Shown piece by piece: positions 14,001-32,200 of a stretch of 64,000 bases of DNA (position 1 is the first letter of the stretch; each line of letters opens with the position of its first letter). The translations under genes were made by a program, and so were the position numbers. The stretch lies in contig NW_020845065.1 of NCBI RefSeq assembly GCF_003704095.1, positions 1 through 64,000 on the forward strand. The letters are read 5' to 3'. The DNA comes from Pocillopora damicornis. Its lineage: Eukaryota. Under the pieces are notes generated by a model. The model saw nothing but the letters and a program-made list of their open reading frames with translations, did not search any database and was not told where the DNA came from.

Positions 14001-16360
14001 GGGAAAATAGAAATATTCCAGATTTTCCCAACTATCCCAGACAGTTTTCGTTTTTCTGAAACATCATGGTCTTACTGATCACATACTCACTGATTGCCTG
14101 AAATTTTCTGAACTTGTGAAAATAAGGCTCTATTTATCTCCATTCCCCCCACTGCCACCACTGACAAACAAAACTACTGTGTATATTCACTTCTTTGCAG
14201 CAAAAATATTTACCACAAATTCATACAAATCCACTGGATATTGCAGTATTAGACGATAACACATTACCTATTTTCTCGTATCTGCTGCGTCAGCTTCTCT
14301 TTTCGAAGACTCTCTAACTTCATCCTTTCAAGCTCCTGCATGATACAAAATTGATACAGATACTGGTTTAACTTTAGGTGACTGATGATCAACAAGCCAG
14401 GCACATTGACTGTACATGGCCTATCTTTTAATGAAATTAAAAAACATTTAGAGCCAAAATGTGACCTCTCAATGCTTCAAAGGGCCAACCATTTGTTTAG
14501 CATGTTATTGATCAGGCAGTTCTAGTAAATAAAATAGATGCACAAGTACATCAACACAAACTGCTTTAAACTTTGAACTTCCAAAAGTGATTAACAAGTA
14601 ACATCTCCCTATAATATTCACACAATATTCAGCAAAAGGTAATGTGGATACTCAAATCTATTAAGTACAAGTTGTTAACAAATTTACAAGGAAATGAGTA
14701 GCACCTACACTGTAGAGAAAGCAAATTAACAATCAGATCTAGGGAGTTAAAGGGTTTAGACTTACTTAATACATACATTTTACATTCCACAATTTGTCAT
14801 AAGTTTCTCTAGTTTTTGTACCTACCATACTCGCTCTATACTTAAAATCAACACTGACTGTATTTTGCCCTTAGACTAAGCAATGCAATCAGTGTAACAG
14901 TGTTTAAAAACAGCTCTCAGTTCAGGAAGATCCTCTGTTCAAGGTGCTAAATACCAATATTGTACACCCTGTTTAAACTCAAGCCCTAAAACCTGTACTC
15001 TACTTGGCAATACTAACTGGTTTAGGCCTAAGGGATGAAACATCCACCATTAGTATTGGGTCAGTGTGTGTACTAACCTTGGCCAGTCTTTCTTCCTGTT
15101 CTTGTTGTCTTTCCTGAAGAATCTTTTGTTCTTGTTGCTAGTGAGGAAACACAGTATCTGATGTTAATTCTGTGTAGTCTCATGTTAAATGCATGTAATA
15201 CAGTTTAGGCTTCCTTAAACAGGAACCATTGCCTTTGGGAAGCAAAAAAGTTCTTAGTTGGCTGTTTCAGGCAACAGCTGGCCAATATCTGATTTCACCT
15301 TGAGGTTCATGAGTAAAGCTGTTTACTCACAGCTAAGTCTGAAGGGAGCCTTCACTGTAAATACCAAGAAAAGTGTTTTCAGTTGAGCAACAATACCAAA
15401 AATGACAAATTAATGTCCACTTTGCCAGTTTGTATCTTATTCTGTCTTTGGATGACATACATATTTTTCAGTATTAAGTGAAACAGTTTGAAATTTCAAT
15501 CCAATAATCAACAATAGGAACTACAGATAATATCAAGTAAAAGAAATAAAATGGAACCAAGAATTAAATCACACAACAACTTGTTAGAGCAAGTTCCATG
15601 ACAATCCTCAACTTCATCTGAGTAACTGTCACAGCCCGTTAGGCTTTTGTCCTGAGAGATCTTAAATTGCAACAAGGCATATGTCTGCGAAACATTAGAT
15701 TTGTTTTCTATCTGGGGAGGGGGGTATACACTTTCAAACCAGTTTGTTTTGATTGTTCTTTTTTCCAATTTAAGATGTTGTTTAAATAAAAATTAGGAAG
15801 TAAAAACTAGAGATCAAACTGGTATGAACATGTTTAATCCCAGCAAAAAATTTAAACCAGAGCATACACATTTCTGCTATAGATATTGGGATACAGTTTG
15901 CAAACAAGAAGCCGATTACTTGATTGCTAAGTACGAAAGTGATCTACTACTTGCACGCGAAAAATTTACCCACTGTCATAAACAGATACTGAAAAGGAAA
16001 AGCCTTTACTTTTCTGATTCCTTCGTCCATTTCTCTTTCAGTCGCTTCCTGGTGAAGTCTACGTAGAAATCGTTTATTTTCTATCCTTTCTTCACTGGAC
16101 ATGTTAGCCTCTACAACACGTTCCTGGTTGATTCGCTTCAATTGATCTTCCCGAGCAATCTCTTTCCTTCTGTTCTCAGCAAGGAGTTTTTGCTGTTGAG
16201 CATGACTTAAGTTCATTCTTCGAACAGATGCCTTAAAGGAATTACAGAAATAATAATGCATTAAATGGATGCAATACTGAGGAAAACTCACCGTACTGAG
16301 TCATAGACAATCACCACAACTAGCAAGAAAATATCGTACAAATATGCCACTACTAACCAT
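8044..16360 (-). CDS. MNS1: Meiosis-specific nuclear structural protein 1 (ciliary microtubule inner protein), ~501 aa, 13 coding exons: 16358-16360 (ATG, tentative), 16010-16231, 15078-15137, 14268-14335, 13090-13192, 12098-12327, 11218-11434, 10532-10581, 10316-10373, 9844-9966, 9585-9719, 9130-9255, 8044-8154
   Basis: All exon phases are consistent. Recognisable MNS1 motifs: QIRENSVELRELEAKLKAGFMNRERAAQLAEK, KQEAYEEFLKEKLMIDEIVRKIYEEDQ, MLEKFAEDDRIEQMNAQKRRMKQLEHK, HASKLLGFLPKGV. Coiled-coil composition throughout. Confidence 0.93.
9316..9545. mobile_element. Short interspersed MITE-like repeat in an MNS1 intron
   Basis: GAGGACATTACACGGCCGCGCGGAGATAC...TTTTCGCGCGAAAGCTCATTTGGTATTTCATTGGTG; CpG-rich island in an AT-rich intron resembling common coral repeats (recalled, not searched). 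Confidence 0.4.
11757..12032. mobile_element. MITE-like dispersed repeat family (ATTGG/CCAAT-rich core); other copies ~24553-24720 and ~54035-54282, fragments ~5105-5190 and ~41205-41345
   Basis: Shared core TTTGC.TT...TGCTC.GTGATTGGTCCAGAAAA.T.GC...ACCAATCAGAT.CAA.ACTAA. Imperfect terminal inverted ends AGAGCAATTT.. and ..CGACACTCGATCGAAAAGCGCT. Confidence 0.75.
12456..12820. repeat. Minisatellite, ~90-bp unit x4, in an MNS1 intron
   Basis: TTGATCTGAAACCTACAGAAACTATCAAAGATATT...CCAACTTTCAAACAATGCTGAGATCTCT..CAATTAAA.CACATATTTACA recurs four times at ~89-91 bp spacing. Confidence 0.95.
14566..14758. mobile_element. Degenerate TTAA-type (piggyBac-like) MITE
   Basis: Begins TTAAACTTTGAACTTCC and ends GGGAGTTAAAGGGTTTA; similar organisation to 54508-54710. 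Confidence 0.5.
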
Positions 16361-16956
16361 AATATTAACACCAAAGAAGTAAATCAAATCCAAAGCGTAA
16401 ATTTAACTTCTGGGCCACTTTCAAATCTGTGAAAATGCAATATAAGCTTACTAAGACACTACTGGCTCTGATGGACCACCACAAGTACGATCTACTTGAC
16501 AAATTATGTTTGTTGCTGTAACAACGAACGGGCCTCATTTACATGTTCGCCTCAGTTCTCCAAGTTTCTCCTCGGTCTCGCATCACCTCGGAACAACGAC
16601 TCAGCCTGACTGGGTCAAAGTTACCGCTGAGTCCACACAAGTGCAGTCCATTGTTTTCTTGTCCAAATATAATTGTTGTCATGACAACTAGAGCGTCTCA
16701 GTGGGATTCTTTCCACGCGGAGCTTTGCACTGGAATGTCACGCGGGAAACAAAATTCTTACGTCATGCCGAGTTACCTGTTGGTTGTACCTTGCAGCTGC
16801 GGGGAATAGCAGAGGCCATTTTAATATTGTAGAAGGTTGTAATGCTTTTCATGTTGTTACACTGCACGTACCAAGCACCTCTGCACCTAAAGCACTAGCT
16901 TTGTCACTGAACTGAGTGAGGTATCCGCACAGCACAATTGAGGTGCAACTAGGCCC
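16361..16956. promoter_or_regulatory. Bidirectional promoter region between MNS1 and the RBPMS-like gene, with two RFX X-box-like motifs (16512-16525, 16675-16688)
   Basis: Divergent start codons ~600 bp apart. GTTGCTGTAACAAC and the perfect palindrome GTTGTCATGACAAC resemble the X-box GTTNCCATGGNAAC typical of ciliary genes. Confidence 0.6.
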
Positions 16957-19900
16957 ATGGACACCAAATCGACTTCAGATGATGAGGTTTGAGCACTTAT
17001 GCCGCGCGCTTTAGACACGATAGATAGAAGTGAATTCACCCACACCCTAGCGTCCGTAACATATTGATGCTTTCTTTTCTAGGTTCGAACCTTGTTCGTG
17101 AGCGGCTTGCCAATCGATGTAAAACCTCGAGAAATATACCTCCTTTTCCGAGGCTTCAAGGTACGCTGCGCTTTCTTCGGCACAAGTGTTTTGTCGCTAA
17201 TATTTTCCGTACAACATCATTTACGGCTCGGCTGAAAATGCCGAAAAGCGAGACATTAATCTTGAATGGGATTCGATAGGCATCAATCTAAATTTCTCTT
17301 AGACAAATCAGCGAAATAAATGAAGAGCTAAGTAAACTTATTTTACCGTTAAACGATTTAAATGACTGTCAATGTTTTGTAATCGACTTGGGCAAGGTCG
17401 CAGGGTTCAACTAGGTATTGAAAGAAACAAATGAATATTGAAAAGCGTTCGTTTCCCTTCGAGAAGCTTAAATGTTATAATAGCACGGTGCTATTTTCGT
17501 CTGAGCCTTACAGCTGCGACATAAGAGTTATTAGCAATAGTTGCAACAACTTTACGTAACTTTTGGTCTCCTGCAAAGTCAGCAGCACAGATTTTGGCAA
17601 ATATTTGCAGTGCGTCTGGCGCCGCCATTATGAACGTACACGATTTATGGTGTTAAGCTAACTCATCTTTTATGCAAACAAATAACAAAGAAGCGGCTTG
17701 TGAGTTCTCTTTTATTCTTCACAGGAATGTACACGACCCTAAATTTTATAAATAAACGAAGAAGTCTTGCGAAGTTTGCCCAAATCAGAAACTGGCGAAT
17801 TACGTTCAAAACGAAGAGGGTTGGCAATTTTGCGCAGAAATTGAAAGTTGTAATTATCACTTCGCTATGCTCACGATTCCAGGAGCAATTAAGGACAAGG
17901 AAAGCTAATTAGGTGCTCAAAAAGAATAGACAGAATTTGAAAGCGGCATGTGGTTAGAACATTTGCATGGAAGGTGATTACTTTGCGACCAAGTTGGTCA
18001 AATTAGAGATACATCTGTTACAGATCCACTTCGTAAACCAACCTGACGATTTAGCTTCGTTTTAGTTCAGGTTGTGATACATATCTGAATAAATTGTTTA
18101 TACCTCGTGTAAATCAAACACCATTATCGCGACTGACTGAGAAGTAAAAGGCGAAAACCTAAGTATCGTAAATACTCGATTGACGAAACCGTAGACCTCC
18201 CATTAGTCAACAGTTGAAAAGAATTAATTTGTGCAAGGCCCGATTTTGCTAAATAGATAACGGTTTATTCACTAGACATCGAAATTCACACAATACGGTT
18301 TGAGTGATATCAGGAAAAACTATTGTTATTCCGAATTGATCTTCTTGAAAACATACCATTGTACTAGCTTCAGTCTTCTTTTACGACAAGATCAACTAAC
18401 ACACCGTACTCGACTTTTAAGCAATACTAAGAATATGTATCATCAATAACTCAATCATTTCCGTAGATCATAATATAACACATGTAATTTTGCTTGTTCA
18501 AGATATATTTTTGCGTTGAAGCTCAAATGTACATGTGTCCTGTGTGTTTTAACACCGGCTTGGAATACAACGATAACTGAGTAGGCATTTTTTTACGAGA
18601 AGATTTATCTCATTCTCCGGAACGAAACAATGGGTGTTTTGAAAATACATATTCAAGTTTGTTTTCAATTGATTTGCTTCCCTTCTTTGCATAAAACATA
18701 ATGTTGCATTTACAAATATTCGATCCTTCGAGATCGGTCTGATATCGATCACCAACAACCCAGTATCGCCACATTAAAAAGCATTAAGATATTTTTGTAC
18801 GACTCTCGTTTCATGCCAAAACCTGACAAACAATAAGTTTTGTCTCCGCTTTTTCTCTGTTGCAGTTACAACAATTTTCTGCATTTAGAGATGGTTTTGA
18901 ATTCGAGATCTTTGCGTAAAATTAATTTTTTTTTCTTTCGGAATTTCTCGCAACCCACGCCAGCAAGATAATACTGTATTGAGAGCTGGCAATTTTCGCC
19001 CAGCGTGGAAGACTAAGAAAGTTTGTTATTATTGTTCCAGGGTTATGAAGGATCACTGCTTAAGCTTACAGACAAACAGGTAGGAATAATAATGATAATA
19101 GCAGGGTGGAAGAAACAATTATTAAGCCAACTGTGTCTCACTCTGTTGAATAATACATTTCTACCTTATGGTTCTCATTTCTCATTAACTCTGGGCTAAA
19201 TAGACTCGCAATGGATGTAGCGTTTGAGTCTTAAACAAATTGAATCATAAAAATACGTCAGACGTAAATCTACGTGAAGTAGAATATTTGGTATCTTTTT
19301 GCAAAGGACCACTTTTCGAAACCAATTTTAACGTGTGCCGTTGAATCTTCTAACATTCTGTTCTTGGGGTGGAATTCAATCTCAGGCCTCGCTGGTTTCC
19401 AGGCCGAGTCGAAGTTTCGAATTTAAGATGCTCCACTCCATAATGACAGGAAACTCTCTAGACTGCAAAAATTCAGTCTAAGCCATCAAAAAATAATATC
19501 TTAAGAAGTTTTGAAGTTAAAGCCTTTTAACTCCTTTTGTGGGGGGTAATTAACAATGTTAATCCATCCAAAAGTGCTCAGGGTGAGTGTTGGTATGACA
19601 TGAATTCCTTAAACAAAACATTCTGAGGCTTGCTGTGAGCATAGAAAACTTCCAATAGCTTTGCTGCAAAGAAAAGTATTCAACGATATAATTACCATCC
19701 CATGTGGTCTTGCAGGGCTACTGAATAAATTTTCTGTGCGGGAAATTGTTTCAATAGTGAGCCCGTAGCTTCTCTAGGTTCAATTTTTTTTAACTCACTT
19801 CCTAAATAATAATAAGAAACAAACTCCCTTGAAAAATGGCGGACATGAAAGCTATGCTCTTCATCTTTACCTTTGATTCTTCCAACAGCATGATTAAATA

Positions 19901-22900
19901 CTGAAAAATAAAGTTTCTGACAAAATCAGACAATCGATCATTATGACCAACTTCTAAACCTCTTGTATATCTTTTTTTTGTCATTACAACAGGGAAAACC
20001 TTCGGTAAGTGTAACAGTACTTATCATTCAATTCTCTTCGTGAAACTTGTAGTTCGTTTATTGATTGTGACACTGAAAAGATGCACGCATGTGATTGGTC
20101 CTGAGAAACCATAATTGATTTGTAGATTAAAGATAAAAAAGTCAAATTACGAAAATACTTTGGCTAAGCAAATTTTACACAAACACCTTGACGATAGAAA
20201 CGTATGAAATTAACTTTATGATTTCTTGGGATATTTCATAATAATTCAGAATATAATATAAGAAGTTTATGATGTTATCAAGTATACCCCCAGTGAGTTC
20301 TTTGCACTTTATAGTACCCAAACACATGTAACTGATAGGCGTTTCAGTGTGTGTCTCATTATAGCAACTTGTATTCTTAATAATTTCTGTCTAAAAACAA
20401 TTCATCTTTTGACCTTAGCCTGTTGCATTCGTCACGTTTGAAAGCAGAGAGGAGGCAGAGGAGGCTAAAGCTTCGTTGCAGGTAAGAAAATAAAAAACAA
20501 GCAAGTAATTCATTGTGTGCCCTACACTGATGAACGACAGAATATAGCTCTCACCACAACTGTTCAGTTATTTACAATATTTATACAGGTTGGGCATGTT
20601 CATCTTTAGAGCTGTGTTAAATGGGGGCCTGTATAAATAAACGAAAAAAAGCTACGTTCCCTACTATTTGCGAGAAGTGCGTTTTTTTTAACGTCCCCTG
20701 CTAAACGCACGCTGGGGTTGACTAGAAAAAAAACACGCACGTACCGGTTGCAAAGTTGATATTTGGGAAGTAAAAATGTAATCTGTTGAACTACACAAAC
20801 AAATTTATAAATGTTTAAAAACCCATTTTAATATGGAAAAATTTAAGACAACTATGCCCATATTTCAAAAACTAGACCAATGCCTTTTTCAAGAATACAG
20901 TTTCAATCCTGTATTTCTATCCTTAGGATAGTAAACTGAACATTTCGTACAGTTCTAATTCTTTTGTTAGTTTACTTTGCCTCAATTACGAGACTATTCA
21001 TGCTTTTTTTTTCTTTTAAATATTATTATTAAGGGTGTACGATTCGATCCAGATGTCTCGCAAACGCTTCGTTTGGAGTTTGCTCGCTCTAATACCAAGG
21101 TATCCAAGCCGGTGAACAAACAGGCTGTGTTAACTTCCGTTCCACCCTTCTTTCCTCGAGAGCCTCAGCTCAGTAAGTACAAAGTTCAAATATAATACGA
21201 TCTATTAACAAGTTTTATCAAGGACTTATTAGTTTGGTACGAATGATTTCAACAACATTGTCATCAGAAAAAGCATAAACAAAAAAGAGGAAAAACCTAG
21301 ATAGGGATTTATTAGCATATATAACTACACTCTGACTATATGCCCGGCAGCTGAACTATTTCCACAGAATTTCCACCGAAAATTTTTCCCTTCGAGTGTC
21401 ATACCCCATTCACGCCAGCAATACATGTTAAGTTAAACCGTGTTTAACTTAATAAAAATCAGAAACAGAGAAATGAAGAACTAAACTTTCCATAGGGTTA
21501 AAGCAGTCGGTAACTTGGATTTTAAATTTGCTAAATTTGAAGTCGACAAACACTAGTCTAAGCAGCTTGAGTGAAGGAAACAAATTTACACCGTGTTGAA
21601 CAAAACGTGTTTAATAAATGTTTCGGCTTTGGTATGAATGAGTTAATAATATACTCACCGCGTGTGCCTATGCTTTATGTTAATTGATTCGATTTTGCGC
21701 TGTCCTCTTTTCTTTTCGTGACGTTTGAGGTTATACCCCTTAGCGATTTCCACCTTCCTCATTGTCTCTGCGTTTCTTTTTCTTTCTTTTTTTCAGTGCA
21801 TACAGAGCTTGCTGCAGCAGGATTTCTGCCGGGACCAGAGCCGAGCATAGCATACCCTGCGTGAGTAAAGTTGAACTAAACTGATCTAAAAAGCACTCTG
21901 AAGCGTTGGTAACTTTGTAACATGTAAGGTGCAGTAATATGGCCTACATTCAGTGAGAATCTTACTCAAAATGTGTTTTATTGCATTGTTACTTTGCACA
22001 ATGACTTTTGCAGAACTTTCTGTTTCAGGAAAAAAAACTGTTTGTTTGTCTGAATCCACAAATGACAGAGAATTGTTTTGCATAATATTGAGTTATATGT
22101 CTTGTCCATATCGATGAGATGTACGAGTGTAAAACGCTTTCCCTCTCACCAAGCTCAAACCCACGACCCTGAGGTTGGGTCTTTTTTTCAAAATTCAGAG
22201 GGACTCTCAACTCGAGGGCGTGATAAATCACTTCTCCCCTGATACAATTAGCACGTTAGAAATAATCAGTTACTGTGCCAAAAAGAATAAGTACAGCGCG
22301 TTTTAAGCACAACTAAAAATGATGAACCAGTCACACCTTGAGGATTGTGTAACGTCTAAGTGTCGGTTTAACTTGTTCTAAACTTTCGCACAAGTTAGGT
22401 CCGCAGTACTAAGAATCAAGCAAAAACTACTTTCATTATAAGAAAAGTTAAAAAATAAATAACTGATGATAGCATCTCGTAATGCAGTCGATTTTTCTTG
22501 TCTTGTCACTCCAACAGGCCAATATTTAGCGACATCATGGCAGCTACAGCTCAACACACTTTCAATCATCATCCCTCCAGTATACTACAGCTACAAGTGC
22601 GTCTTACTAACTCTTACATAGCAAACTGAAGGCGTCTTTGAGTCTAAAAAAGAGAATATTAGTTTTTTGAAAGAATTTCCTTATATTTCTATTTTTTTTT
22701 TCTAATGAAGATTAAGACCAAACGGTCACTGATTTCATTAAGTCTGTATCCTGCAATAGCAAGTATGGTTAAAAACTAGGGAAAGACCTCTGGAAGTGTA
22801 TGGAAGCCCCTGTATTTCGTCGGTATGAATGAGTTATAACGGAAAGAAATCCAATTTATCAAATTTTCTCCAACAAATAATCGAAATGAAGAACTAAAGA

Positions 22901-24359
22901 CATACTAAATGTCATAATTCATTCTATATATTTCAAAGTCAAGACAAGATAGCAGGGCTACCAATATTTTGTACTACCTTTTCTTTTTCTGCTTTGTAGG
23001 CGTTCCCGCAGCACCATCCCATCATTCCAGCACTAGCGTCGCCAACATCCCTTCATCACATGGCCAGTCTGGGAAATCCTCCATGTTCAACACTCTTTGT
23101 GGCCAACCTTGGGAAGGGAAGCTCCGAACAAGAGTTAAGAGATCTTTTTGCTGAGTAAGTTAACAATTGATTGAACTGCCTCATAAATCATGTCTGTGAA
23201 CACTTTAGGGAGTTGAAGTTCCAGCTCCCTAAATGTTACCGTCACTTGAACTGTGCAGTGACTTCAACTCCTTTCCCAGCATCCAACATATATTTTTTCT
23301 CATAACGTAGTTGCAAATCAAACAAACTGCATTTGCATTTCTTCACGACAGTTTGACAGTATGCTTTCCTTATATTATTTCTTTCTCTTTTTTCCTTTAG
23401 CTTGCCGGGCTTTCGACGCTTAAAAATGCACAGTAAAGGGAGTAGCCCCGTCTGTTTCGTGGAATATCAGGTATTTTTCTATTTATTTTTATCAGTTGCT
23501 CATTATTTACTTAACATTTAGTTATAGTGATAGCTCTCATGAGATACAGTAAACATAAGGACACAAATTTCTCCGGAGAGAAAAAATACTTTCACAGTGT
23601 ACTTGTGATGATTTTTGCGACAGCCATCTCATTGCTTGGCAACCACTCTTTTTCCCCCTTTTTAAGGATATCTACACGGCGACTCATGCTATGAATGTTC
23701 TTCGAGGGTGAGTAGTGAGCATGTTTTTCAGTAGCCACCCTTTCGGTTTATCTAACAACGAGGTACAGCTGCACATAAAAATTTATCTCGGAGATTAAGA
23801 CAAATTTTGCCAATTTTCCTTTGAGAATTATTGTATCAGTATTAATAATTAAAATGATGATTTTCAGAGCATAACATGTCAATTTTGTGTCAACTTGTTT
23901 AGCCATAGTATAAGCTAATGGGGACACTGAAGTAAACTAAAGTAATCATTGCAGTAATCATGTAACTGCATTTTCTTTGAGCGTCTTTTTTGTGAAATAA
24001 AAAAATTGCAAAGTCACCATAGTTAAAAAATTGTACTTCGGTATCATAATCGTGGGGTGATAATAGTGATATACCAATTAATCCTCGACCAATAAAAATG
24101 CCCACGTCTCTTAAACGACCCAAGCAATTGTACCAAAATGTGTCGTTATGAAAAGTAAAAATTGAGGAAGGAAGTCAGTTATTGATCTAAACTAGGCCCT
24201 AAAAATAACTTTTGTAACAAACACGGAGTTTTAAATGTCTATTTTCTCATTTCAATTTTATCTTTACTTCTTTACAGCCATATCATGCAGTCTTCTTCAG
24301 AAAAAGGAGGCATAAGGATAGAGTACGCAAAAACCAAAATGGGCGAGGTACATGAATGA
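16957..24359 (+). CDS. RBPMS/couch potato/MEC-8 family RNA-binding protein with two RRMs; exons 16957-16986, 17083-17160, 19041-19079, 20419-20481, 21034-21172, 21797-21860, 22518-22596, 23000-23154, 23401-23470, 23667-23707, 24278-24347 (stop at 24359 if unspliced; last exon uncertain)
   Basis: RRM1: [84 protein letters not shown] (family hallmark). RRM2: [13 protein letters not shown]...[37 protein letters not shown]...[12 protein letters not shown]. All phases consistent. Confidence 0.92.
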
Positions 24360-27300
24360 CTCTTTGTGTCACGCCCTCGTGTGTAGGTACATTTAAGTGT
24401 GTTGTGCCACTTAAGGTAGTTTTATCAACTTTTTAGAGGTTTGGCTTGACTTTGTTTTTTAATTTAGTGTCTACTTTTCTACAATTCATCAACTACCATC
24501 ACTGAAATCAACGCTACGATTACTCATGGTTTATTGTTTTCATCGCCCTCCTTAGAGCAATTTTTAATTCAGTCGATAGCAATCCGAGACTGCATTGGTT
24601 TTGCTTTACCTTGCTCGGTGATTGAACCAGAAAACTCGCACCAATCTCTAAACCAATAAGATTCAATACTAAAATCAATCACGACTTGGTTACCCACCCA
24701 CAATCAATCGAAAAGTGCTCCTTCCTTCTTACTTTCTTTGGTCTGATTTTGATCAATAATTTCAAAACTGCTTCATTTGTGAGTTAAATTACACGGTAAT
24801 TCGTATTCATTGTAGATACAGCTGTGTGTAAGCCCATATCTTTTTGTTAGGTTTTTATTATTTTATTTTTACTATTATGTTTTGTGAATTACTTAGATAG
24901 GACGACGAATCATTTACAATACTCCAGGCATCTTTATAGTTACCAGCACTGGAGAACTCACGAACAAATTTTCTTCCTCTGAGAAAACTTTTAGGAATTC
25001 ATTTGCAACCCCAGTGGCCTGTAAAAATCTGTTTTTTCTTACGGTTTTACAAAAATTTTTAACATATGTCCTGGTAGGCATTTTAAAATAACTAGCAAAA
25101 AAACATCTAAGCCAATTTTGGCAGCTGCTGATTTTGAGGCCTCTTCTTGTCCTTTTTGCAGGGCAGGATTGACGGTATGGTCGCAATACCGATGCAATAT
25201 TGAGACGATATGGAAAAATTAAAGTTCCATTCCAAAAGCTGCTTCAGTGAGAAATAAGAGAAAAATACCAAGAAATAATCTAAAGCTACAGTGATGTTTT
25301 AGAAGATATTTGTTAAGAAATAGATTGAGCTAATTTATTGCAGTGTTTGCCTGTAAAAATGAACTGAAAATCAGATAACTAAGTATTTATGAAGGAATAG
25401 GGCTTTTTGCTGGCACGAAAGGGTCTTCGGATTTTTTTTTAGAAATAACTGATATTTATAACCCTGTTGAGCCGGCGAGAAAAAAACCGTTTTCTTCTCA
25501 TAATCATAAAAAAACGAAATTCTCGCTTCTAGCAAAAAATCTTCAGTTTGAATGTAAAAAAGGCTATAAGAAAAAAAGCTAGAATTCTTTTTCTGAAAAT
25601 GTTATATTTCCTTCTTATTTTTGTTTTTATTTTTCACAAGTGGCTATTTTTCTTAACTAGATGGGAATGGAAATGTTCCCTGTTCCGATAAAGGAAACAC
25701 AATTTTTTAACTTATTCGAAAAGAGGTGTGATTTGATTTCATCTATTTCCAGGTTTCAATCCAGATTGTAAATATTATTATTAATATTTTACATTAAAGT
25801 ATTGAATGAAACCAATATTACTCAGAGTTTTTACTCAGTTATCGCTGGATGAAGATCATCTTTAATCAATTTATCTTTACTTCCCATTTACCTTTGTTTA
25901 GCCGTCGGTAAACGTCTAGGCAATAAACTATGCTTTCAGTCAGGTGAATCAAGGGTGCTCCATCTCTCCTTTTGGCTGCGTACTAGAACTAGAACAACCT
26001 TGCGTTCACTCCTCTTTCTATGGTGCGCGAATCACATTTAATGTGTTCCCCAAGACCAAGAACTCTGCGTATTCTTTGAGAAGTGTAATGATCCCTCACC
26101 ATATATTGCGATAACAGTTTCAGCTGCTCAATAAAACGCACATATTACGTTTTTGTCGTCAAAATGATCACAATCGAAGAGCCATTGCTTTCTATGTGCT
26201 AAGTTAACCTTTTTCAACACATTACAAGAAATTTTTAAAATAGGGATCATTTTTAACTAACAGTTTGGTTTCATCTATGGGGATTAGCTCATTTATTACT
26301 AACTACTTACAGATTATGAAGTAATCAAAATATGAAAATAAAGAATATTAAAAACCGGTTAGGATTGAATCAGTACAAAGCCTGATTATTGCAGATAGTG
26401 GTTTTAAAAATTTGAAAATAAAAGGAAACAGAATTAGTCCTTCTTGGGATGAAAAGAAGTTTTCCTTTATGAAAAATAAACTGATATCATAAGCTGTGAT
26501 TTAAATTAGTGAAGTTATAATGCATTTTCGATACCTGTCTGGGAATCATGTCTAGCAATCTAGAATGAAAAGTGTGAAATTACACAAACATTCACACGGC
26601 ACCGATAAGCATTTTTATAATACTTCATCTTTACTTTCTCTGTTGTCAAACTTAAGCTTATTTCAAAACACCTTTTCGAATGTAATACATGTTTACTAAG
26701 TGAAGTTCAGCTTTGCTCTCTCACATAGTACTTTCCCTAAATTTAAAAACTCTATCATTAACGTTTTTGCCTATCTAACCTCTTTTCCGCTTTTTCGCTG
26801 GTTACAACTGATTTGTTTCCTACCGAGAAATAGCGTCATACTGATGAAAGAAAGCTCAGCGAGTCAGTAGTGTATATCAGATTGCTCTTCGTCTGATACA
26901 AAGAGGCTTTGATTTTCATTGTAAAAAATTTTCAACAGATACACGCTACTTGAACAGTAAAATGACTTTGGACAGCTCACTGAAGTCTTGGCAAATATAT
27001 AAGGGATCATAAGACATAAGTTCTATTTTTGCTGAACAGCTTGAAATTAAACGACTTTAAAGAAACCGAAATCAAGTTCATATGTTTTCAAATTGTAATT
27101 TTCAGAGAAAATTTTGCCACTGAATTATTACCATATCACTATTTACGGGGGCTGAAATTTCACAAAGCCAATATAACAGGATTGCTTATCGCTTTTCCGG
27201 CTTTCATATATAAAACTATTACCGACCTTAATTTCGTGGCTTGTTTTAAATTTAACAACCTTAAATTAACTGAATTCGGCTACAACGTGTGTAGCTTAGA

Positions 27301-29245
27301 ACCATTAGATAAAAAATAACGACATGCACAAACCAAACAGAGGCGTAATTCTCTGTGTCATTCCCAATGCCTTATTTTGGTAAATTTAAATTTAGTGGGT
27401 GACGCGTAGAAAATCCCCTTGAAGTAAAAACTTGCAAAGAAACTCTGCGGGGAGTCGTTGTTTTACCAAATCCAATTCTGAAAACTGTTTTTGTTACAAA
27501 AAAGATCACGTTTCATATTTGTGATTACTTTTGTAATTTTCTGTTATTATATTTACAATTCTTAAATTCATATGAAAAAAAAACCGTGATTTTATTTCAG
27601 AAATCATCGAACCCACAAAGAGAAGAGCTGTTTAGTTTTTTTCTTGCGGTTTAGAATTGATGCAGAAGGTACATTTTTCGTTGAGTAGCTTTAAGATACA
27701 ATCTCGTTGGAATCTTTTTTTTTCTTTTTTAAACCAAAAAGAGGTTTATTACTGCCTGGGTAACAACGGATAAAAAAAATCGGTCAAATGTGAAAAGAGT
27801 ATCAAAAATAATGCGATTGAGTAGTCTTCGAGATGATGTGTTTTTCTAATAACTTTTTAATTCAATAAAAGTCGAGACCTTAGAAGCAGTTATGTTTTTC
27901 CCAGGTCAAAATCTTCCCAGATTTATACTTATTTGTGAAAAGATACGAGGACTCGAATGGAAGATTTTTAAGCCTTAATAACTCGTACTGAAATGACAGT
28001 TGAAATAATATGTCAATAAAAGATGAGATGTAAGGAGAACGTGTTCCCTGCAACTGAATAAATAACCCATGCAGATTTCGTCACTTTGTATTTTCGTTTG
28101 AAATCAACTCGGTACCTAGATTTACTGCATAGCTTTTGGTAGTTTCATGTTGCTAGGTTACCTATTTCCGATTCGATTTTCCGAAATCATACACGGGCAT
28201 ATAAAAATCTGATATTTATCTACCCAAATATTTCCTTGATCAGAATCATAAAACGTGATGTTTCAAAGAGTAAAAGAAAGCTTTTGAATATTTAAACAGA
28301 GGTGCGGCTAGCTTTGGGCATTTAAATTCTGTTTCCCAGCTGCAAAAACAACGGTGTGGGGTCGCCTTTTAATCTTTCAAATGATGCAATTGTTGAATGC
28401 GCTCGATTCATTTTTATTTTTCTTTGCGAACATTGTTTCTTTCCTCTGTGTGTCTTCTTTCTGTCAGCCTTCTTTACCTTTTATGTGAAGGAACTCACAG
28501 CGTTTGAGGAATGAAATTATTCTAACGTTTCATAATAGCAGTATAAATAAAAATAGTCCCAATTGAATTATGCATAGCCCGGTCTATTTTTCGCACCAAT
28601 TTTTCGTCGCCTTTTGACTCACAAAAAGACATTGAAAGAACTCTGCGTAATTCAATTTGATTTTCCCTCTCCGCTCAAGTAACACAAAGTAGTTCCAGTG
28701 TTTATTTATTGCAGATGATAACTGTTGATCTTGGTTGTTTTAAAAGTGTTTTGCCGTGGAAAGCGGTGCCAATGAAAACCGCCAAAAATTCTTAAGCAAT
28801 TATTTGATGAGGCCTTTATGAAAGGCATCATTGTCACTCCTACGTATTGGCAACTCCCACTAATCATTGTTTTCATGACATCTAAAAATTTGTAAATGTA
28901 AATCTCGTTCTACAGTCTATAAACAGTTGGCTTCGACTGTTTACATTGGAGCCAAGGTGGTTTAAAGTGCTCCAAATTATATTATTTTCACGCAAGGTTA
29001 CTCCAGTCGCAGCAATCGTCACCTTATTCGGCGCGATCGTTCTCGGCATTAAGGACGTGGTCAACTCGATGACTCAAATTAACTTCGCCATATGAACGTT
29101 GCGAGATCATGATCTCTTCGTTCTCGGAGGGCTCTCGCTGAGATTTTACTCCATAGAGTCAAAGATTATGTTGATTTGAACGGCGTAATCTCTAAAGGTT
29201 TAGCTGGTACTTTTGGTTCAGTCGAGATTAACCTTGCGCTTTGGA

Positions 29246-32200
29246 ATGGAGAAGAAAAAGGTTTCCAGATCAGCGGATGACGATTCGTCGAAGCAATGTC
29301 AGAAATTCGAGGGAGAATCAATAAATTTGGCCAAAAAGATCTTAAATACCGTTGACAAGGACCTCGTCGTACCAAAATTGTCCTTCTTCTTCTTTTTTAT
29401 GGCAACCGGCGCTTTCCTTCCTTATCTTGGTGTGTTCTACAAGCAGCTGTGGCTTACAGCTCGACAGTCTGGAATTCTGCTTGGAGTTCGCCCTTTTGTG
29501 AAAATGTTATGCTCCCCTCTCTGGGGAATGGTCACGGATGTATGCAACAAACCGAAGCTTATTCTACTTGTGTCTATTCTGGGAACAACTGTGGCCCATT
29601 TCTCGCAAAGCATAGTCTCGCCGTTTCATTTACCTTGCTACCCTGATGTGAACAGAACAAACTTTAGCCAGATCCGGTCAAACTTGTTCGCCCAATACTC
29701 AACTGATCGTTCTTCGCGACAAAGTGGCTTCCCAGCCACTTCTACACGTTTGCAAGAAAATTCTCTCGTAAAAGGTGCCGACCAAACAAATTATTCATCA
29801 GCTGAAAATGCCGGCACTACAGTTCGAGGGTCGATGGCGCCAGAAAAATTCCTAAGAAATAATGATTTTAACAAACAGAAGGAGCTCGGGAAGGAAGTGC
29901 ATCCCTTCGATTATGGGACAGCTCAGGAAGAAAGCATGGAAGACACCGGACCAAGGCATGAAGATAAGCCGCGAGAAATCACCGACGCAAATTCCAAAAT
30001 ATTGACAAAAAACAAGAAACGCAAGAATCCTAACATGAAGAATGATTTCCGCGTCAAAGACAACCAAAGCATTTTTGCAACTTTGCTTGTGATTGTTTTT
30101 CTGGGTGAATTTATAGCTGCACCAGCTCCAATGCTGACCGATAGCGGAACGCTTGGTATCCTGAGTGGAAGGGAACACCAATACGGTCGACAAAGGCTGT
30201 TCGGTTCGGTAGGCTGGGGAATCGGTTCTTTGCTGTCAGGAGCCGTTGTGACAGCTTTCAATTCATGTCCGTATGAAGACAGCATCAACTATGTGGCGTG
30301 CTTTTACGTATTTGCCGGAGCCATGATTCTCGACTTCTTCGTCGGCCTGTTCTTCAATTTCGTACCAGCGCCGTCCAAACAGGATGTCTCTAACATGGAA
30401 AATGAGTTTTTAAGGGGACTGAAAATATTTTACAACCTAAAGAATGGAGCCTTCATCTGCACACTGTTGTTTCTTGGGTTCTCCCACAGCCTGCAGCTTT
30501 CTTTCTTGTTTTGGTTTCTTCAAGACATTGGTGGAACACCAATCCTTTTTACCCTCATTGTCGCTGTAAATTGCCTGTCAGAGGTGGTGATGTTCTTCCT
30601 AGCGACCTACTTTGTGCAGAAGATCGGCCACGACGCTGTTCTTTACACAGGGCTTGCCTGCTATGGGTTACGATTTTTGCTCTACTCGTACCTTAATGAA
30701 CCATGGTGGGTTTTGCCGCTAGAAGCTTTGCAAGGCTTCACATACGGAGGAGTTTGGACAGCAAGTGTTGCGTACGTTGGACCGCAACCAGGTGAGGAAA
30801 ACGGTTTATGTTCAGAAATTTGTGGCAAGAGACCGTGAGCCGTTTCTGTTTATTTTAAATCAAAAATCATGGTAGTCAAAATTTCAATTCTCTAAACTTC
30901 AGCAAATATCAGATCTAGTTGACATGCATTTCAATGTCACATTTCATCTTTTGATTAATTACCTGTGCTCCAGAAATAGAGAAAGCGAAATTTTTAATAC
31001 CGGATCGCACCGCTTAAATATTTGTTGTTTTGAAAGGAAATAAGATCAAACAAAACTAGTTATTCTCCCAGTCAGATTACAGTATTTGTTTTCGTTTGCG
31101 TTATTAGATACCGGACCTCATGCAAGGAAGTCGTAAACGACAATATGGAAAAGTTTCAGTGGGCTATGATTTAAAAACACCATTCATTTAGTCACTTAGA
31201 GTAGATCAAAAAAATCTCCCCTGATAGTAGATTTACATTTCAGTTGAAAAAAACTATCAAACAAAAGCAAAAGATATTTCAGGTTGAAGGCAAAATTATT
31301 TTTTTAGTGCATATAGAGTCCTGGAAAATGTTTCTTATGCATATCGAAGTTATAATTGGACTTAAAGCTAAGGACACTTTTTTTATGTCACCACCTCTCT
31401 ACATAAATGAGATTCTCAATTTTTGTAACACCCGCTCATCAAACTTAGAGGAAAATTCACTTTTTAAGCTAATTAATTTGTCTAAGAACCAAAAACCATT
31501 AACTGTATCGGTAAACCAACACCTCATGCCATAATGAAGCTTTGGCTCGAATGAATAAACTAAGTCGCCGTTATTAAAAACACTGTTATTCAAATTAGTT
31601 TACTCTCAAACGCAGAGTCTTGTTTAAATAGGTGTTTTTGTAAAGATTTTTTAATCCAGGGTCAACTCAACTACACTTCCTTTTCATTTAGTTCGAATTA
31701 TTTGACGGAATTTCAGTGGGCGCGTTGCTAAGATACCATTTGAAAGACTTTATTCCTTAATTTCGAACTGAACTAAGGCGGTGAATTATTGATATTTTCT
31801 TCATAAGCTTAATCCTGTTTTTCTTTTTAAACCATTCATCAACCTTCTTGTCTTTTCCGGAGCATCTGGTTTTTTCACCCAGGTTCTCTTTCAAAGGAAG
31901 TTAATTGATCTCCTTTCCATCTGATTTACTTGGCCCACCTCCCCCCACATAAAACCAATTATGAAAGAAATCATTTTTTGGGCCGTATGCTTTATAATTA
32001 AGCTGTCTTGGCCGCTTGTTAATAAGTAATGGTGATGAAAATTTCCTTTTATTTGACCATTGCAAATCTTCATAATCAGTGGAGAAAAAATTTTTTTTGC
32101 TGATTTTTTTTTTTCAATTATTATTATCATCATTCTCTAAATTTAAATAAGACAACGTCAGAAAGCTGAAAAAACAAATTCACAGTTGTAACGAATTTCT

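What the first reader, a model, noticed from the sequence alone, without database searches (positions are those of the whole stretch)
16860..17000. RBPMS/MEC-8-family gene carries a dense array of its own GCAC binding motif just before its start codon
Seen: GCAC occurs at 16864, 16875, 16883, 16892, 16927 and 16932 (six in 72 nt, against about 0.3 expected at uniform base composition), with TCAC at ~16904, another GCAC at 16993 just after the first donor, and CAC runs near 17036-17045. Known: RBPMS, couch potato and MEC-8 RRM1 dimers bind tandem (G)CAC motifs with variable spacing. Inference: a built-in autoregulatory element acting on translation or first-intron splicing, in a probable cnidarian, which would imply a pre-bilaterian feedback loop.
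Basis: partly seen in the sequence, partly recalled or inferred. Interest (0 to 1): 0.75.

Follow-up and report, generated by a model that had tools for sequence, protein, structure and literature searches.

The report
Conserved GCAC array in coral RBPMS/MEC-8 leader
A coral gene for an RBPMS/MEC-8-type RNA-binding protein carries six copies of that protein family's GCAC binding motif in the transcribed leader of its own mRNA, kept unchanged in several distantly related corals, which makes self-regulation likely but still unproven.

Summary
Six GCAC lie on the + strand at 16864-16935 and a seventh at 16993. No Markov simulation of the window reached 6 in 72 nt (0 of 2000).

In the 234-Mb genome I judged by eye about 12-15 non-repeat arrays of four GCAC. 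This one sits in the only RBPMS-family gene found.

Spliced RNA contigs from four studies start at 16709-16803 and join 16986 to exon 2. The array is therefore inside the mature 5' leader.

All six GCAC, two more CAC and the intronic GCAC are invariant in six sequences from about five coral lineages. One lineage clusters with Orbicella faveolata. Third codon positions are only 56-62% identical, and 17 of 76 array columns vary, none in a motif.

The protein keeps every GCAC-contacting side chain described for MEC-8.

Self-binding is the best reading: feedback on translation, probably through a conserved upstream ORF that overlaps the array.

Limits:
- No binding data exist.
- The most conserved part of the leader (16751-16859) has no CAC.
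- Nothing outside stony corals could be tested.
- Mammalian RBPMS is described as not limited by autoregulation, so "pre-bilaterian" is unsupported.

The parts
16864..16935 (+). Array of six GCAC (starts 16864, 16875, 16883, 16892, 16927, 16932). Spacers between neighbours are 7, 4, 5, 31 and 1 nt. Extra CAC at 16860 and TCAC at 16904.
   Evidence: All motif columns are invariant in six sequences, while 17 of the 76 columns vary.
16709..16956 (+). Minimum extent of the 5' leader (5'UTR part of exon 1), at least 248 nt.
   Evidence: Spliced RNA contigs cover 16709-16984 (X2), 16714-16984 (X3), 16777-16989 (X1) and 16803-16984 (X6). Contigs cannot fix the true start.
16664..16708 (+). Conserved core-promoter block, with a TATA-like AAATATAAT at 16665-16673 and a 14-nt palindrome at 16675-16688.
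   Evidence: 96-98% identical to L009 and L006, while 16560-16663 is almost unalignable. Calling it TATA-like and X-box-like rests on recall.
16735..16809 (+). Upstream ORF 1 (AUGs at 16735 and 16765, same frame, stop TAG 16807-16809).
   Evidence: AUGs and stop are kept in the genomic orthologues. I counted 4 nonsynonymous and 1 synonymous change by reading the alignment.
16842..16898 (+). Upstream ORF 2 (AUGs at 16842 and 16851, 18 codons, stop 16896-16898). It contains GCAC 1-4. GCAC 1 starts 22 and 13 nt after the two AUGs.
   Evidence: Start, stop position (TAG or TAA) and length are kept in all six sequences. The three codon changes are all nonsynonymous.
16751..16859 (+). Most conserved stretch of the whole locus, inside the leader. 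It contains no CAC.
   Evidence: The top 100-nt windows start at 16751-16811 and are 95-98% identical to L009 and L006. 16779-16859 is 98-99% identical.
16957..16986 (+). Coding part of exon 1 ([10 protein letters not shown]).
16987..17082 (+). Intron 1 (96 nt, GT..AG), with a conserved GCAC at 16993-16996 and a conserved CCACACCC at 17040-17047. Retention would give a stop right after the donor.
   Evidence: The joint is seen in 4 of 4 runs. One unspliced contig of X1 covers 16960-17110.
17083..17160 (+). Exon 2, the start of RRM1 (RNP2, helix 1, dimer interface).
   Evidence: Matches RBPMS2 2m9k at 1.8e-10, RBPMS 5det at 3.1e-10 and MEC-8 5bjr at 1.3e-9.
19041..19079 (+). Exon 3 ([13 protein letters not shown]).
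19993..20004 (+). 12-nt microexon encoding GKPS, flanked by AG and GT. Its Ser aligns with MEC-8 Ser73, a guanine contact.
   Evidence: The same 12 letters are in the contigs of all 4 runs; one search placed them wrongly, as four letters between 19080 and 20412. Alignment is and the contact residues.
20419..20481 (+). Exon 4 ([24 protein letters not shown]1).
21034..21172 (+). Exon 5, the end of RRM1 and its C-terminal extension ([12 protein letters not shown]).
21796..24356 (+). Remaining coding exons, with approximate limits from protein matches only: 21796-21861, 22519-22599, 23000-23155, 23405-23479, about 23625-23708, and 24285-24356. They include the second RRM.
   Evidence: tblastn of the L004 protein on the window. 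Exon ends were not checked against RNA.

Best explanation
The array is a conserved cis-element of the mRNA leader. It serves as a multivalent landing site for the gene's own product.

Shown:
- The six GCAC are in the mature 5'UTR, 22-93 nt before the AUG.
- They are strand-specific.
- They have been kept in corals whose synonymous sites are close to saturation.
- The encoded RRM1 has the dimer interface and all GCAC-contacting side chains of MEC-8.
- Several motif pairs have spacers (4, 5, 7 and 13 nt) within the 4-14 nt range that bound MEC-8, couch potato and RBPMS dimers better than a single motif.

Inferred: when the protein accumulates, dimers or higher oligomers coat the array and lower translation of the main ORF. 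The most likely route is through upstream ORF 2. The first GCAC starts 13 and 22 nt after its two AUGs. A bound protein there could hold scanning 43S complexes over the upstream AUG and divert them into the short ORF. This is the logic described for Sex-lethal on msl-2. The last two GCAC, 22-30 nt before the main AUG, could add a direct block to scanning or re-initiation. The result would be negative feedback on protein level.
For: Rarity:
- 6 GCAC in 72 nt was reached in 0 of 2000 simulations.
- A genome-wide census of four GCAC with 3-9 nt gaps gave 182 matches, nearly all in tandem or low-complexity repeats. By eye I count about 12-15 non-repeat arrays, this one included.
- Independence predicts about 1.9 such arrays per strand.
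- The family has one gene in this genome: 3 exon matches, all in this locus.

Transcription: spliced contigs in 4 of 4 RNA runs from 4 studies contain the array.

Placement in the mRNA: in the two orthologous cDNA contigs, 6 of 9 GCAC lie in the 5'UTR. The density is 3.1-3.4 per 100 nt, against 0.23-0.35 in the CDS and 0-0.11 in the 3'UTR.

Conservation:
- 0 of the 24 GCAC columns vary, while 17 of the 76 array columns do (P 5.7e-4; 4.6e-5 counting all CAC columns).
- A circular-shift control that keeps the clustering of variable sites gives 1 of 97 shifts with no hit in the motifs.
- Third codon positions are 61.8% and 55.9% identical between the window and L004 or L005.
- Four-fold sites are 47% identical between L004 and L005. 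Their 5'UTRs are 163 of 178 identical without gaps.

Preference for G before CAC: P 8.8e-4. This matches the GCAC preference of MEC-8 and couch potato (PMC5311487, section 4).

Protein: Phe34, Lys63, Thr65, Ser73, Phe77, Arg107, Glu109, Ser113 and Thr115 of MEC-8 are all matched. The two differences, Leu110 to Phe and Lys112 to Arg, are at backbone contacts.

Upstream ORF 2 keeps its start, stop and length in all six sequences.

Precedent for a protein-activated upstream ORF: PMC5488161, passages.
Against: - There are no binding, CLIP or reporter data for any cnidarian.
- The array interval as a whole is only 84-86% identical to the orthologues. This is about the same as the coding exons and 5-11 points above the introns.
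- GCAC 1-4 border the hyper-conserved block. With the wider frame 16779-16956, 15 of 178 circular shifts also give no hit in the motifs.
- Conserved blocks around GCAC 2-3 include the spacers, so the conserved unit there is larger than GCAC.
- The most conserved part of the leader has no CAC.
- In human cells RBPMS binds mainly 3'UTRs and activates translation. Messages bound at the 5'UTR were not significantly affected (PMC10058251, passages).
- Mammalian RBPMS is described as not limited by autoregulation.
- The finding is post hoc. A reader who knows the motif looked for it in one of very many windows.
- The true start site is not mapped. Contigs give only a minimum extent.
Confidence: 0.4

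Rival explanations
1. The leader is a conserved regulatory element read by other factors. These could be DNA-binding proteins at a promoter-proximal element shared with the divergent neighbour gene, or other RNA-binding proteins that like CA-rich or GCAC-like sites. On this reading the match to the gene's own motif is a coincidence.
For: - The peak of conservation (16751-16859, 95-98%) contains no CAC and runs on from a conserved core promoter.
- The neighbour on the - strand starts within about 200 nt.
- Conserved blocks around GCAC 2-3 are longer than the motif.
- There is no covariation and no stable fold, so nothing argues specifically for an RNA-level role.
Against: - Conservation does not explain why one tetramer occurs six times on one strand (0 of 2000 simulations). 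The antisense GTGC occurs once.
- Around GCAC 4-6 and the TCAC the conserved islands are tight and the flanks vary.
- The flanking bases of the six motifs share nothing. MEC-8 likewise shows no selectivity at those positions.
- G precedes CAC in 6 of 8 cases.
Confidence: 0.3
2. The gene's own protein does bind the array, but in the nucleus or for RNA fate. It might control removal of the 96-nt intron 1, mRNA stability or localisation, rather than translation through the upstream ORF.
For: - A conserved GCAC lies 7 nt into intron 1 and a conserved CCACACCC lies near its 3' end.
- Retention would end the frame right after the donor.
- One unspliced contig spans the intron in the random-primed run X1, at depth 3 against 9.9 for the spliced joint.
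- Family members are best known as splicing regulators acting through CAC clusters near exons (PMC6613909, passages).
Against: - Six of the seven GCAC are exonic and stay in the mature mRNA.
- The unspliced contig may simply be pre-mRNA.
- The listed pieces of the polyA and oligo-dT runs show only the spliced form, though 18 pieces were not shown.
- The TCAC at 17036-17039 is not conserved.
Confidence: 0.15
3. The cluster is a chance cluster of no function, noticed only because the reader knew the motif.
For: - Real DNA is clumpier than the null; seven other tetramers have denser clusters in this window.
- Triple GCAC is not over-represented genome-wide: 409 + 353 matches against 530 + 547 for the reversed control.
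- The scan looks at very many windows.
Against: - All 24 motif columns are kept across lineages with near-saturated synonymous sites, while 17 neighbouring columns changed.
- There is no tandem repeat.
- The chance that one of about 15 non-repeat arrays falls on the sense strand of this 250-nt leader is about 8e-6, or 3e-4 for the whole pre-mRNA.
Confidence: 0.1

Closest known systems
MEC-8 (C. elegans), couch potato (Drosophila), RBPMS/RBPMS2/Hermes (vertebrates): the protein
   Same: - RRM1 matches RBPMS 5det (3.7e-36) and MEC-8 5bjr (9.9e-35) through the orthologue L004.
- The window's exons 2-4 translate identically to L004; exon 1 and the first 32 codons of exon 5 each differ at one residue.
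- Dimer-interface and GCAC-contact residues are kept.
- A second RRM matches MEC-8 RRM2 6dg0 (6e-18), so the architecture is that of MEC-8.
- NCBI names the Orbicella faveolata member of L004's cluster 'RNA-binding protein with multiple splicing-like'.
   Different: - Vertebrate RBPMS has one RRM and lacks the four residues GKPS, which a 12-nt microexon supplies here.
- Leu110 to Phe and Lys112 to Arg, in MEC-8 numbering.
- RNA binding of the coral protein has not been measured.
Tandem GCAC / CAC-N(1-12)-CAC target sites of the family (Soufari and Mackereth 2017, PMC5311487; Nakagaki-Silva 2019, PMC6613909)
   Same: - Several GCAC with spacers inside the 4-14 nt range that bind dimers better than a single site.
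- No preference at the flanking bases.
- Clusters of 9-12 CAC act as functional units in mammalian targets.
   Different: - Known functional clusters are intronic, next to regulated exons, or in 3'UTRs. This one is in a 5'UTR, and in the regulator's own message.
- Three neighbouring spacers (7, 4 and 5 nt) are shorter than the optimum of 8 or more, or 10-12 nt.
Autoregulation of RNA-binding proteins through their own transcripts (for example PTB, Rbfox, Sxl)
   Same: A cluster of the protein's own motif sits in a highly conserved non-coding part of its own gene.
   Different: - Textbook cases mostly act by splicing coupled to decay or by 3'UTR binding. Here the site is in the leader with upstream ORFs.
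- I found no report of it for this family in searches.
- The mammalian literature describes RBPMS as meeting the criterion 'not limited by autoregulation'.
Protein-regulated upstream ORF: Sex-lethal on the msl-2 5'UTR (review PMC5488161, passages)
   Same: A short upstream ORF has an RRM-protein site a short way downstream of its AUG, in a leader that precedes a dosage-sensitive regulator.
   Different: - The protein and motif differ.
- Here the regulator would act on itself.
- Nothing has been tested. The distances (13 and 22 nt) are read from sequence only.
- That a block about 14 nt downstream favours initiation is recalled, not taken from a call.

Membership tests
RBPMS/MEC-8/couch potato protein family | N-terminal RRM with the family's sequence signature | tested here: met
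   Exon 2 alone matches 2m9k at 1.8e-10, 5det at 3.1e-10 and 5bjr at 1.3e-9. The orthologue L004 matches 5det at 3.7e-36 and 5bjr at 9.9e-35. Pfam finds RRM_1 twice in L004, L005 and P0007.
RBPMS/MEC-8/couch potato protein family | Dimer interface of RRM1 (MEC-8 Asp41, Lys43, Arg45, Glu46, Tyr48, Leu49, Leu50, Arg52, Val96, Phe98, Asp99, Pro100) | tested here: met
   All twelve are identical in the window's exons 2 and 5. This comes from the alignment and the exon translations. The residue list is from PMC5311487, section 4. Dimer formation itself was not tested.
RBPMS/MEC-8/couch potato protein family | Residues that read GCAC (MEC-8 Phe34, Lys63, Thr65, Ser73, Phe77, Arg107, Glu109, Ser113, Thr115) | tested here: met
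   All are identical. Ser73 is matched by the Ser of the microexon GKPS. Leu110 to Phe and Lys112 to Arg are at positions that contact RNA through the backbone.
RBPMS/MEC-8/couch potato protein family | Measured binding to GCAC or CAC RNA | not testable with these tools
   Needs recombinant protein.
MEC-8-type two-RRM architecture | Second, C-terminal RRM related to MEC-8 RRM2 | tested here: met
   L004 residues 200-285 match 6dg0 at 6e-18. The corresponding window exons are at 23000-23155, 23405-23479 and 24285-24356.
Autoregulatory cis-element of an RNA-binding protein | Cluster of the protein's own motif within its own transcript, on the sense strand | tested here: met
Autoregulatory cis-element of an RNA-binding protein | Conservation of the motifs in orthologues | tested here: met
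   Met within stony corals: 6 of 6 sequences keep 6 of 6 GCAC.
Autoregulatory cis-element of an RNA-binding protein | The protein binds the element and its level feeds back on its own expression | not testable with these tools
   No CLIP, reporter or knock-down data. Four literature searches aimed at autoregulation, by listing, and the passages I read report none for the family.
Protein-regulated upstream ORF (Sxl/msl-2 type) | Short upstream ORF with the protein's site shortly downstream of its AUG | tested here: met
   Upstream ORF 2 spans 16842-16898, and GCAC 1 lies 13 and 22 nt after its AUGs. It is conserved.
Protein-regulated upstream ORF (Sxl/msl-2 type) | Repression requires both the upstream AUG and the bound protein | not testable with these tools
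   Needs reporter assays or ribosome profiling.
Tandem repeat or microsatellite | Head-to-tail copies of one unit | tested here: not met
   TRF returns 0 rows at minimum score 30. The spacers differ in length and sequence.
Structured RNA element or known RNA family | Stable fold, covariation, or a match to Rfam | tested here: not met
   Fold z-score is -0.66. 0 of 52 predicted pairs show compensatory change. There are 0 Rfam matches at E up to 1. With so few substitutions, covariation has little power.

The most novel reading that the evidence does not exclude
The leader is a self-sensing translational switch conserved across stony corals. Dimers of the MEC-8-like protein bind the GCAC array just downstream of the AUGs of upstream ORF 2. 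This forces scanning ribosomes into that ORF and shuts off the main ORF, which would be a protein-regulated upstream ORF used for autoregulation. A 12-nt microexon supplies the serine that reads the G of GCAC, so it could tune how strongly the protein recognises its own leader. If orthologous leaders of anemones, hydrozoans or bilaterians show the same layout, the loop would predate Bilateria.
Probability: 0.18. Interest if true: 0.75.

Novelty: new member of a known kind. Interest (0 to 1): 0.55.

Why it matters
Many RNA-binding proteins hold their own level steady by binding their own transcripts. I found no such loop in print for the RBPMS/MEC-8/couch potato family, and mammalian RBPMS is treated as a master regulator free of autoregulation. 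A cnidarian orthologue whose leader carries a deeply conserved array of the family's motif, overlapping a conserved upstream ORF, gives a concrete and cheaply testable case. The test needs one recombinant RRM, one 250-nt leader and six point mutations. It would show whether feedback was ancestral and lost in vertebrates, or a coral innovation. It also flags a roughly 190-nt leader that is more conserved than the coding sequence and whose main function is unknown.

Tried and rejected
Tandem repeat origin: rejected. TRF finds nothing, and the array is conserved between deeply diverged corals.

Conserved RNA structure: no support. The fold z-score is -0.66, there is no compensatory pair and no Rfam match.

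Peptide-level selection on the upstream ORFs: rejected. I read the codon changes from the alignment. Upstream ORF 2 has three nonsynonymous changes and no synonymous one. Upstream ORF 1 has four nonsynonymous and one synonymous. What is kept is the start, the stop and the nucleotides.

Paralogue comparison: impossible. The genome has only this gene.

The bacterial-type promoter and terminator scan is irrelevant to this organism and gave nothing.

Earlier notes of the scan held nothing on this locus.

Supplements were not opened. The target tables of the human PAR-CLIP and eCLIP studies (for example table S3 of PMC10058251) might list RBPMS's own mRNA. I could not see them, so 'no reported autoregulation' rests on main texts and search listings only.

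Papers and what I saw of them:
- PMC5311487: passages, and part 1 of 2 of section 4.
- PMC6613909, PMC10058251, PMC5488161, PMC12179342, PMC9723635 and PMC10971380: passages found by term.
- All other titles: search listings only.
- Farazi 2014, Teplova 2016, Ray 2013 and Medenbach 2011 are known to me only as cited in those passages.

That the assembly size (234,350,878 bases, 4393 contigs) resembles the published Pocillopora damicornis assembly is my recollection, untested.

The count of 'about 12-15 non-repeat arrays' was made by eye on the listings, not by a script.


Full report
OBSERVATION. The + strand carries GCAC at 16864, 16875, 16883, 16892, 16927 and 16932, and again at 16993. CAC also occurs at 16860 and inside TCAC at 16904, and three more CAC lie at 17037-17043.

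The window as a whole is not rich in the motif. It has 273 matches on both strands, against 290.6 +/- 18 in shuffles. The cluster is the densest in the window: 6 in 72 nt, where the next best + strand cluster has 4 and the - strand maximum is 2. None of 2000 first-order Markov simulations of the window reached 6 in 72 nt; the maxima were 2 to 5, with 5 in three runs.

Real sequence is clumpier than that null. GCAC ranks 8th of 256 tetramers for its densest cluster, after four homopolymers, AGGG, TCAT and CATC. Tandem Repeats Finder sees no repeat. The bases flanking the six motifs share nothing. Six of the eight CAC in 16860-16935 are preceded by G, against 141 of 749 in the window (P 8.8e-4).

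GENOME-WIDE BACKGROUND. The assembly has 234,350,878 bases in 4393 contigs. Three GCAC with 3-9 nt gaps occur 409 + 353 times, and the reversed-pattern control 530 + 547 times, so the motif is not generally clustered.

Seven further patterns give a full census of four GCAC with 3-9 nt gaps. The matches number 29, 21, 43, 15, 17, 53 and 4, or 182 in all. The controls total 281. Nearly all matches lie in tandem or low-complexity repeats. By eye I count about 12-15 arrays with unrelated spacers, this one included.

Independence predicts about 1.9 such arrays per strand. The chance that one of 15 falls on the sense strand of a given 250-nt leader is about 8e-6, and about 3e-4 for a 9-kb pre-mRNA. 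These figures are post hoc.

THE GENE. The coding exons and their evidence:
- Exon 1: coding part 16957-16986.
- Intron 1: 16987-17082.
- Exon 2: 17083-17160.
- Exon 3: 19041-19079.
- Microexon: 19993-20004, 12 nt encoding GKPS.
- Exon 4: 20419-20481.
- Exon 5: 21034-21172.
- Later exons: to about 24356.

Exon 2 alone matches RBPMS2, RBPMS and MEC-8 RRM1 at 1e-9 to 2e-10.

A search with exon 5 alone found 12 close relatives at E of 1e-10 or better, among them two full-length two-RRM proteins. The cDNA-like contig L004, fetched later, encodes a 286-residue protein. Its first RRM matches RBPMS (3.7e-36) and MEC-8 RRM1 (9.9e-35), and its second RRM matches MEC-8 RRM2 (6e-18). Pfam finds RRM_1 twice.

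The window's exons 2-4 translate identically to L004. Exon 1 and the first 32 codons of exon 5 each differ at one residue.

Against the residue lists of Soufari and Mackereth (PMC5311487, section 4), all twelve dimer-interface residues are kept. So are all nine side chains that contact GCAC. The two differences, Leu110 to Phe and Lys112 to Arg, are at backbone contacts.

The serine that reads the guanine (MEC-8 Ser73) is supplied by the microexon. All four RNA contigs contain the microexon. The reads tool mis-laid those letters, showing four letters between 19080 and 20412.

The genome has no second family member: 3 exon matches, all in this locus.

IS THE ARRAY TRANSCRIBED? Yes. Of 21 runs that hold the stretch, 13 are on record as RNA, from coral or marine metagenome studies. 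I laid four RNA runs from four studies, all kept as contigs. The contigs cover:
- X2: 16709-16984.
- X3: 16714-16984.
- X1: 16777-16989.
- X6: 16803-16984.

In each run the 16986/17083 joint is seen, and the contigs of X2, X3 and X6 run on into the later exons. The leader is therefore at least 248 nt, and the array lies 22-93 nt before the AUG in the mature mRNA.

Contigs cannot fix the true start. A conserved TATA-like element at 16665-16673 would place it near 16700, which is inference. One low-depth contig of X1 spans intron 1 unspliced. A divergent gene on the - strand has exons at 16065-16230 and 16357-16503, so the promoter region of about 200 nt is shared.

The one metagenome scan, seeded with two tool-returned orthologues, gave 12 loci:
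- L004 and L005: cDNA-like contigs with 191 and 178 nt of leader.
- L006 and L009: genomic contigs.
- L010-L015: six near-identical genomic contigs, 99.3-100% alike.
- L007 and L008: contigs that start at or after exon 1.

L004's protein clusters at 90% or more with 'RNA-binding protein with multiple splicing-like' of Orbicella faveolata, family Merulinidae.

Divergence is deep. Third codon positions are 61.8% (L004) and 55.9% (L005) identical to the window over 102 codons. L004 and L005 share 47% of four-fold sites, and their 3'UTRs barely align (413 of 759). Their 5'UTRs are 163 of 178 identical without a gap.

In all six sequences compared (window, L004, L005, L006, L009, L010), several features are identical and identically spaced: the six GCAC, the CAC at 16860 and the TCAC at 16904. 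In the four genomic sequences (window, L006, L009, L010) the intronic GCAC at 16993 and the CCACACCC at 17040 are also identical.

In 16860-16935, 17 of 76 columns vary and none lies in the 24 GCAC columns (P 5.7e-4; 4.6e-5 counting all CAC columns). A circular-shift control that keeps the clustering of variable sites gives these numbers of shifts with no hit in the motifs:
- 1 of 97 shifts for 16860-16956.
- 2 of 59 shifts for 16898-16956.
- 15 of 178 shifts for 16779-16956.

Support at the level of single motifs is therefore real but moderate. These sequences share ancestry, so they show retention, not repeated origin.

In both cDNAs, 6 of 9 GCAC lie in the 5'UTR. The density is 3.1-3.4 per 100 nt, against 0.23-0.35 in the CDS and 0-0.11 in the 3'UTR.

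WHAT ELSE IS IN THE LEADER. The most conserved 100-nt windows of the whole locus start at 16731-16821. They peak at 97-98% for windows starting at 16761-16771. The array interval is 84-86% identical, exons 82-88% and introns 75-81%. The core promoter 16664-16708 is 96-98% identical, and sequence upstream of 16650 does not align. The peak stretch 16751-16859 contains no CAC, so the leader has at least one further, unknown function.

Two upstream ORFs are conserved in start, stop and length. Upstream ORF 1 spans 16735/16765-16809 and upstream ORF 2 spans 16842/16851-16898. Their few changes are mostly nonsynonymous, which I read from the alignment. The constraint is therefore on the nucleotides and on the presence of the ORFs, not on the peptides.

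GCAC 1-4 lie inside upstream ORF 2. The first starts 13 and 22 nt after its AUGs, and the fourth abuts its stop. GCAC 5-6 lie between that stop and the main AUG.

There is no sign of a conserved fold. The z-score is -0.66, 0 of 52 pairs are compensatory, and Rfam gives no match.

MECHANISM. Shown:
- The array sits in the mature leader, on one strand only.
- It is retained across deep divergence.
- The protein is equipped to read GCAC as a dimer.
- The spacers of 4, 5, 7 and 13 nt fall within the 4-14 nt range that bound dimers better than a single site. The stated optimum is 8 or more, or 10-12 nt.

Inferred: the protein binds its own leader and lowers its own translation. The most likely route is to favour initiation at upstream ORF 2, as described for Sex-lethal on msl-2 (PMC5488161, passages), and to block scanning just before the main AUG. 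I put this at 0.4.

Rivals:
- Other factors read the leader and the match to the gene's own motif is a coincidence (0.3).
- Self-binding acts on intron 1 splicing, stability or localisation (0.15).
- The cluster is chance (0.1).

AGAINST A FAMILY-WIDE OR PRE-BILATERIAN LOOP. Human RBPMS binds mainly 3'UTRs and activates translation, and messages bound at the 5'UTR were not significantly affected (PMC10058251, passages). Mammalian RBPMS is described as meeting the criterion 'not limited by autoregulation'. Searches for RBPMS, MEC-8 or couch potato with autoregulation, and for RBPMS with Nematostella or cnidaria, listed no report of such a loop. Supplements, which may list the protein's own mRNA among CLIP targets, were not seen.

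VERDICT. The autoregulation reading is the best available but unproven, and the claim about age is unsupported. This is a new candidate member of a known kind, an RNA-binding protein that regulates itself. It has an unusual placement, in a 5' leader together with an upstream ORF.

Noticed in passing
window 19993-20004: A 12-nt microexon (GKPS), flanked by AG and GT, is present in the RNA contigs of all four runs. Its Ser aligns with MEC-8 Ser73, which contacts the guanine of GCAC. Human RBPMS and the anemone protein P0013 lack these four residues. The reads tool mis-placed the letters next to exon 4.
   Followed up: partly
window 16751-16859: This is the most conserved stretch of the whole locus: 95-98% identity to corals whose third codon positions are about 56-62% identical. 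It lies inside the 5'UTR and has no CAC. It holds a CAGCTG and a GGCCATTTT; the YY1-like reading of the latter is recalled. Its function is unknown.
   Followed up: partly
window 16665-16688: A conserved TATA-like AAATATAAT is followed by a perfect 14-nt palindrome, GTTGTCATGACAAC. The palindrome fits my recollection of the RFX X-box pattern. It sits in a roughly 200-nt promoter shared with a divergent gene.
   Followed up: no
window 16065-16503, - strand: A divergent neighbour gene has exons at 16065-16230 and 16357-16503, joined in two RNA runs (intron CT..AC on the + strand). The exon translation is rich in charged residues and has no Pfam match.
   Followed up: partly
window 16791; L004, L005, L006, L009, L010: Where the window has T at 16791, all five other coral sequences have A. 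This creates an extra upstream AUG (CCATGC) in their leaders.
   Followed up: no
window 25565-25820: A block of the 3'UTR aligns with the 3'UTRs of L004 (69%) and L005 (76%), although those 3'UTRs otherwise barely align.
   Followed up: no
window 16960-17110: One contig of the random-primed run X1 keeps intron 1 (depth 3, against 9.9 for the spliced joint). Retention would stop the frame right after the donor in this genome.
   Followed up: no
window 29213-30838: A long open frame on the + strand downstream of the gene matches Pfam MFS_1_like at 3.6e-69, so it is a transporter gene.
   Followed up: partly
cluster of L004's protein: Orbicella faveolata has two annotated isoforms, of 301 and 287 residues. 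Logan transcripts of 286-302 residues are in the same cluster. This suggests alternative splicing in the linker between the two RRMs.
   Followed up: no
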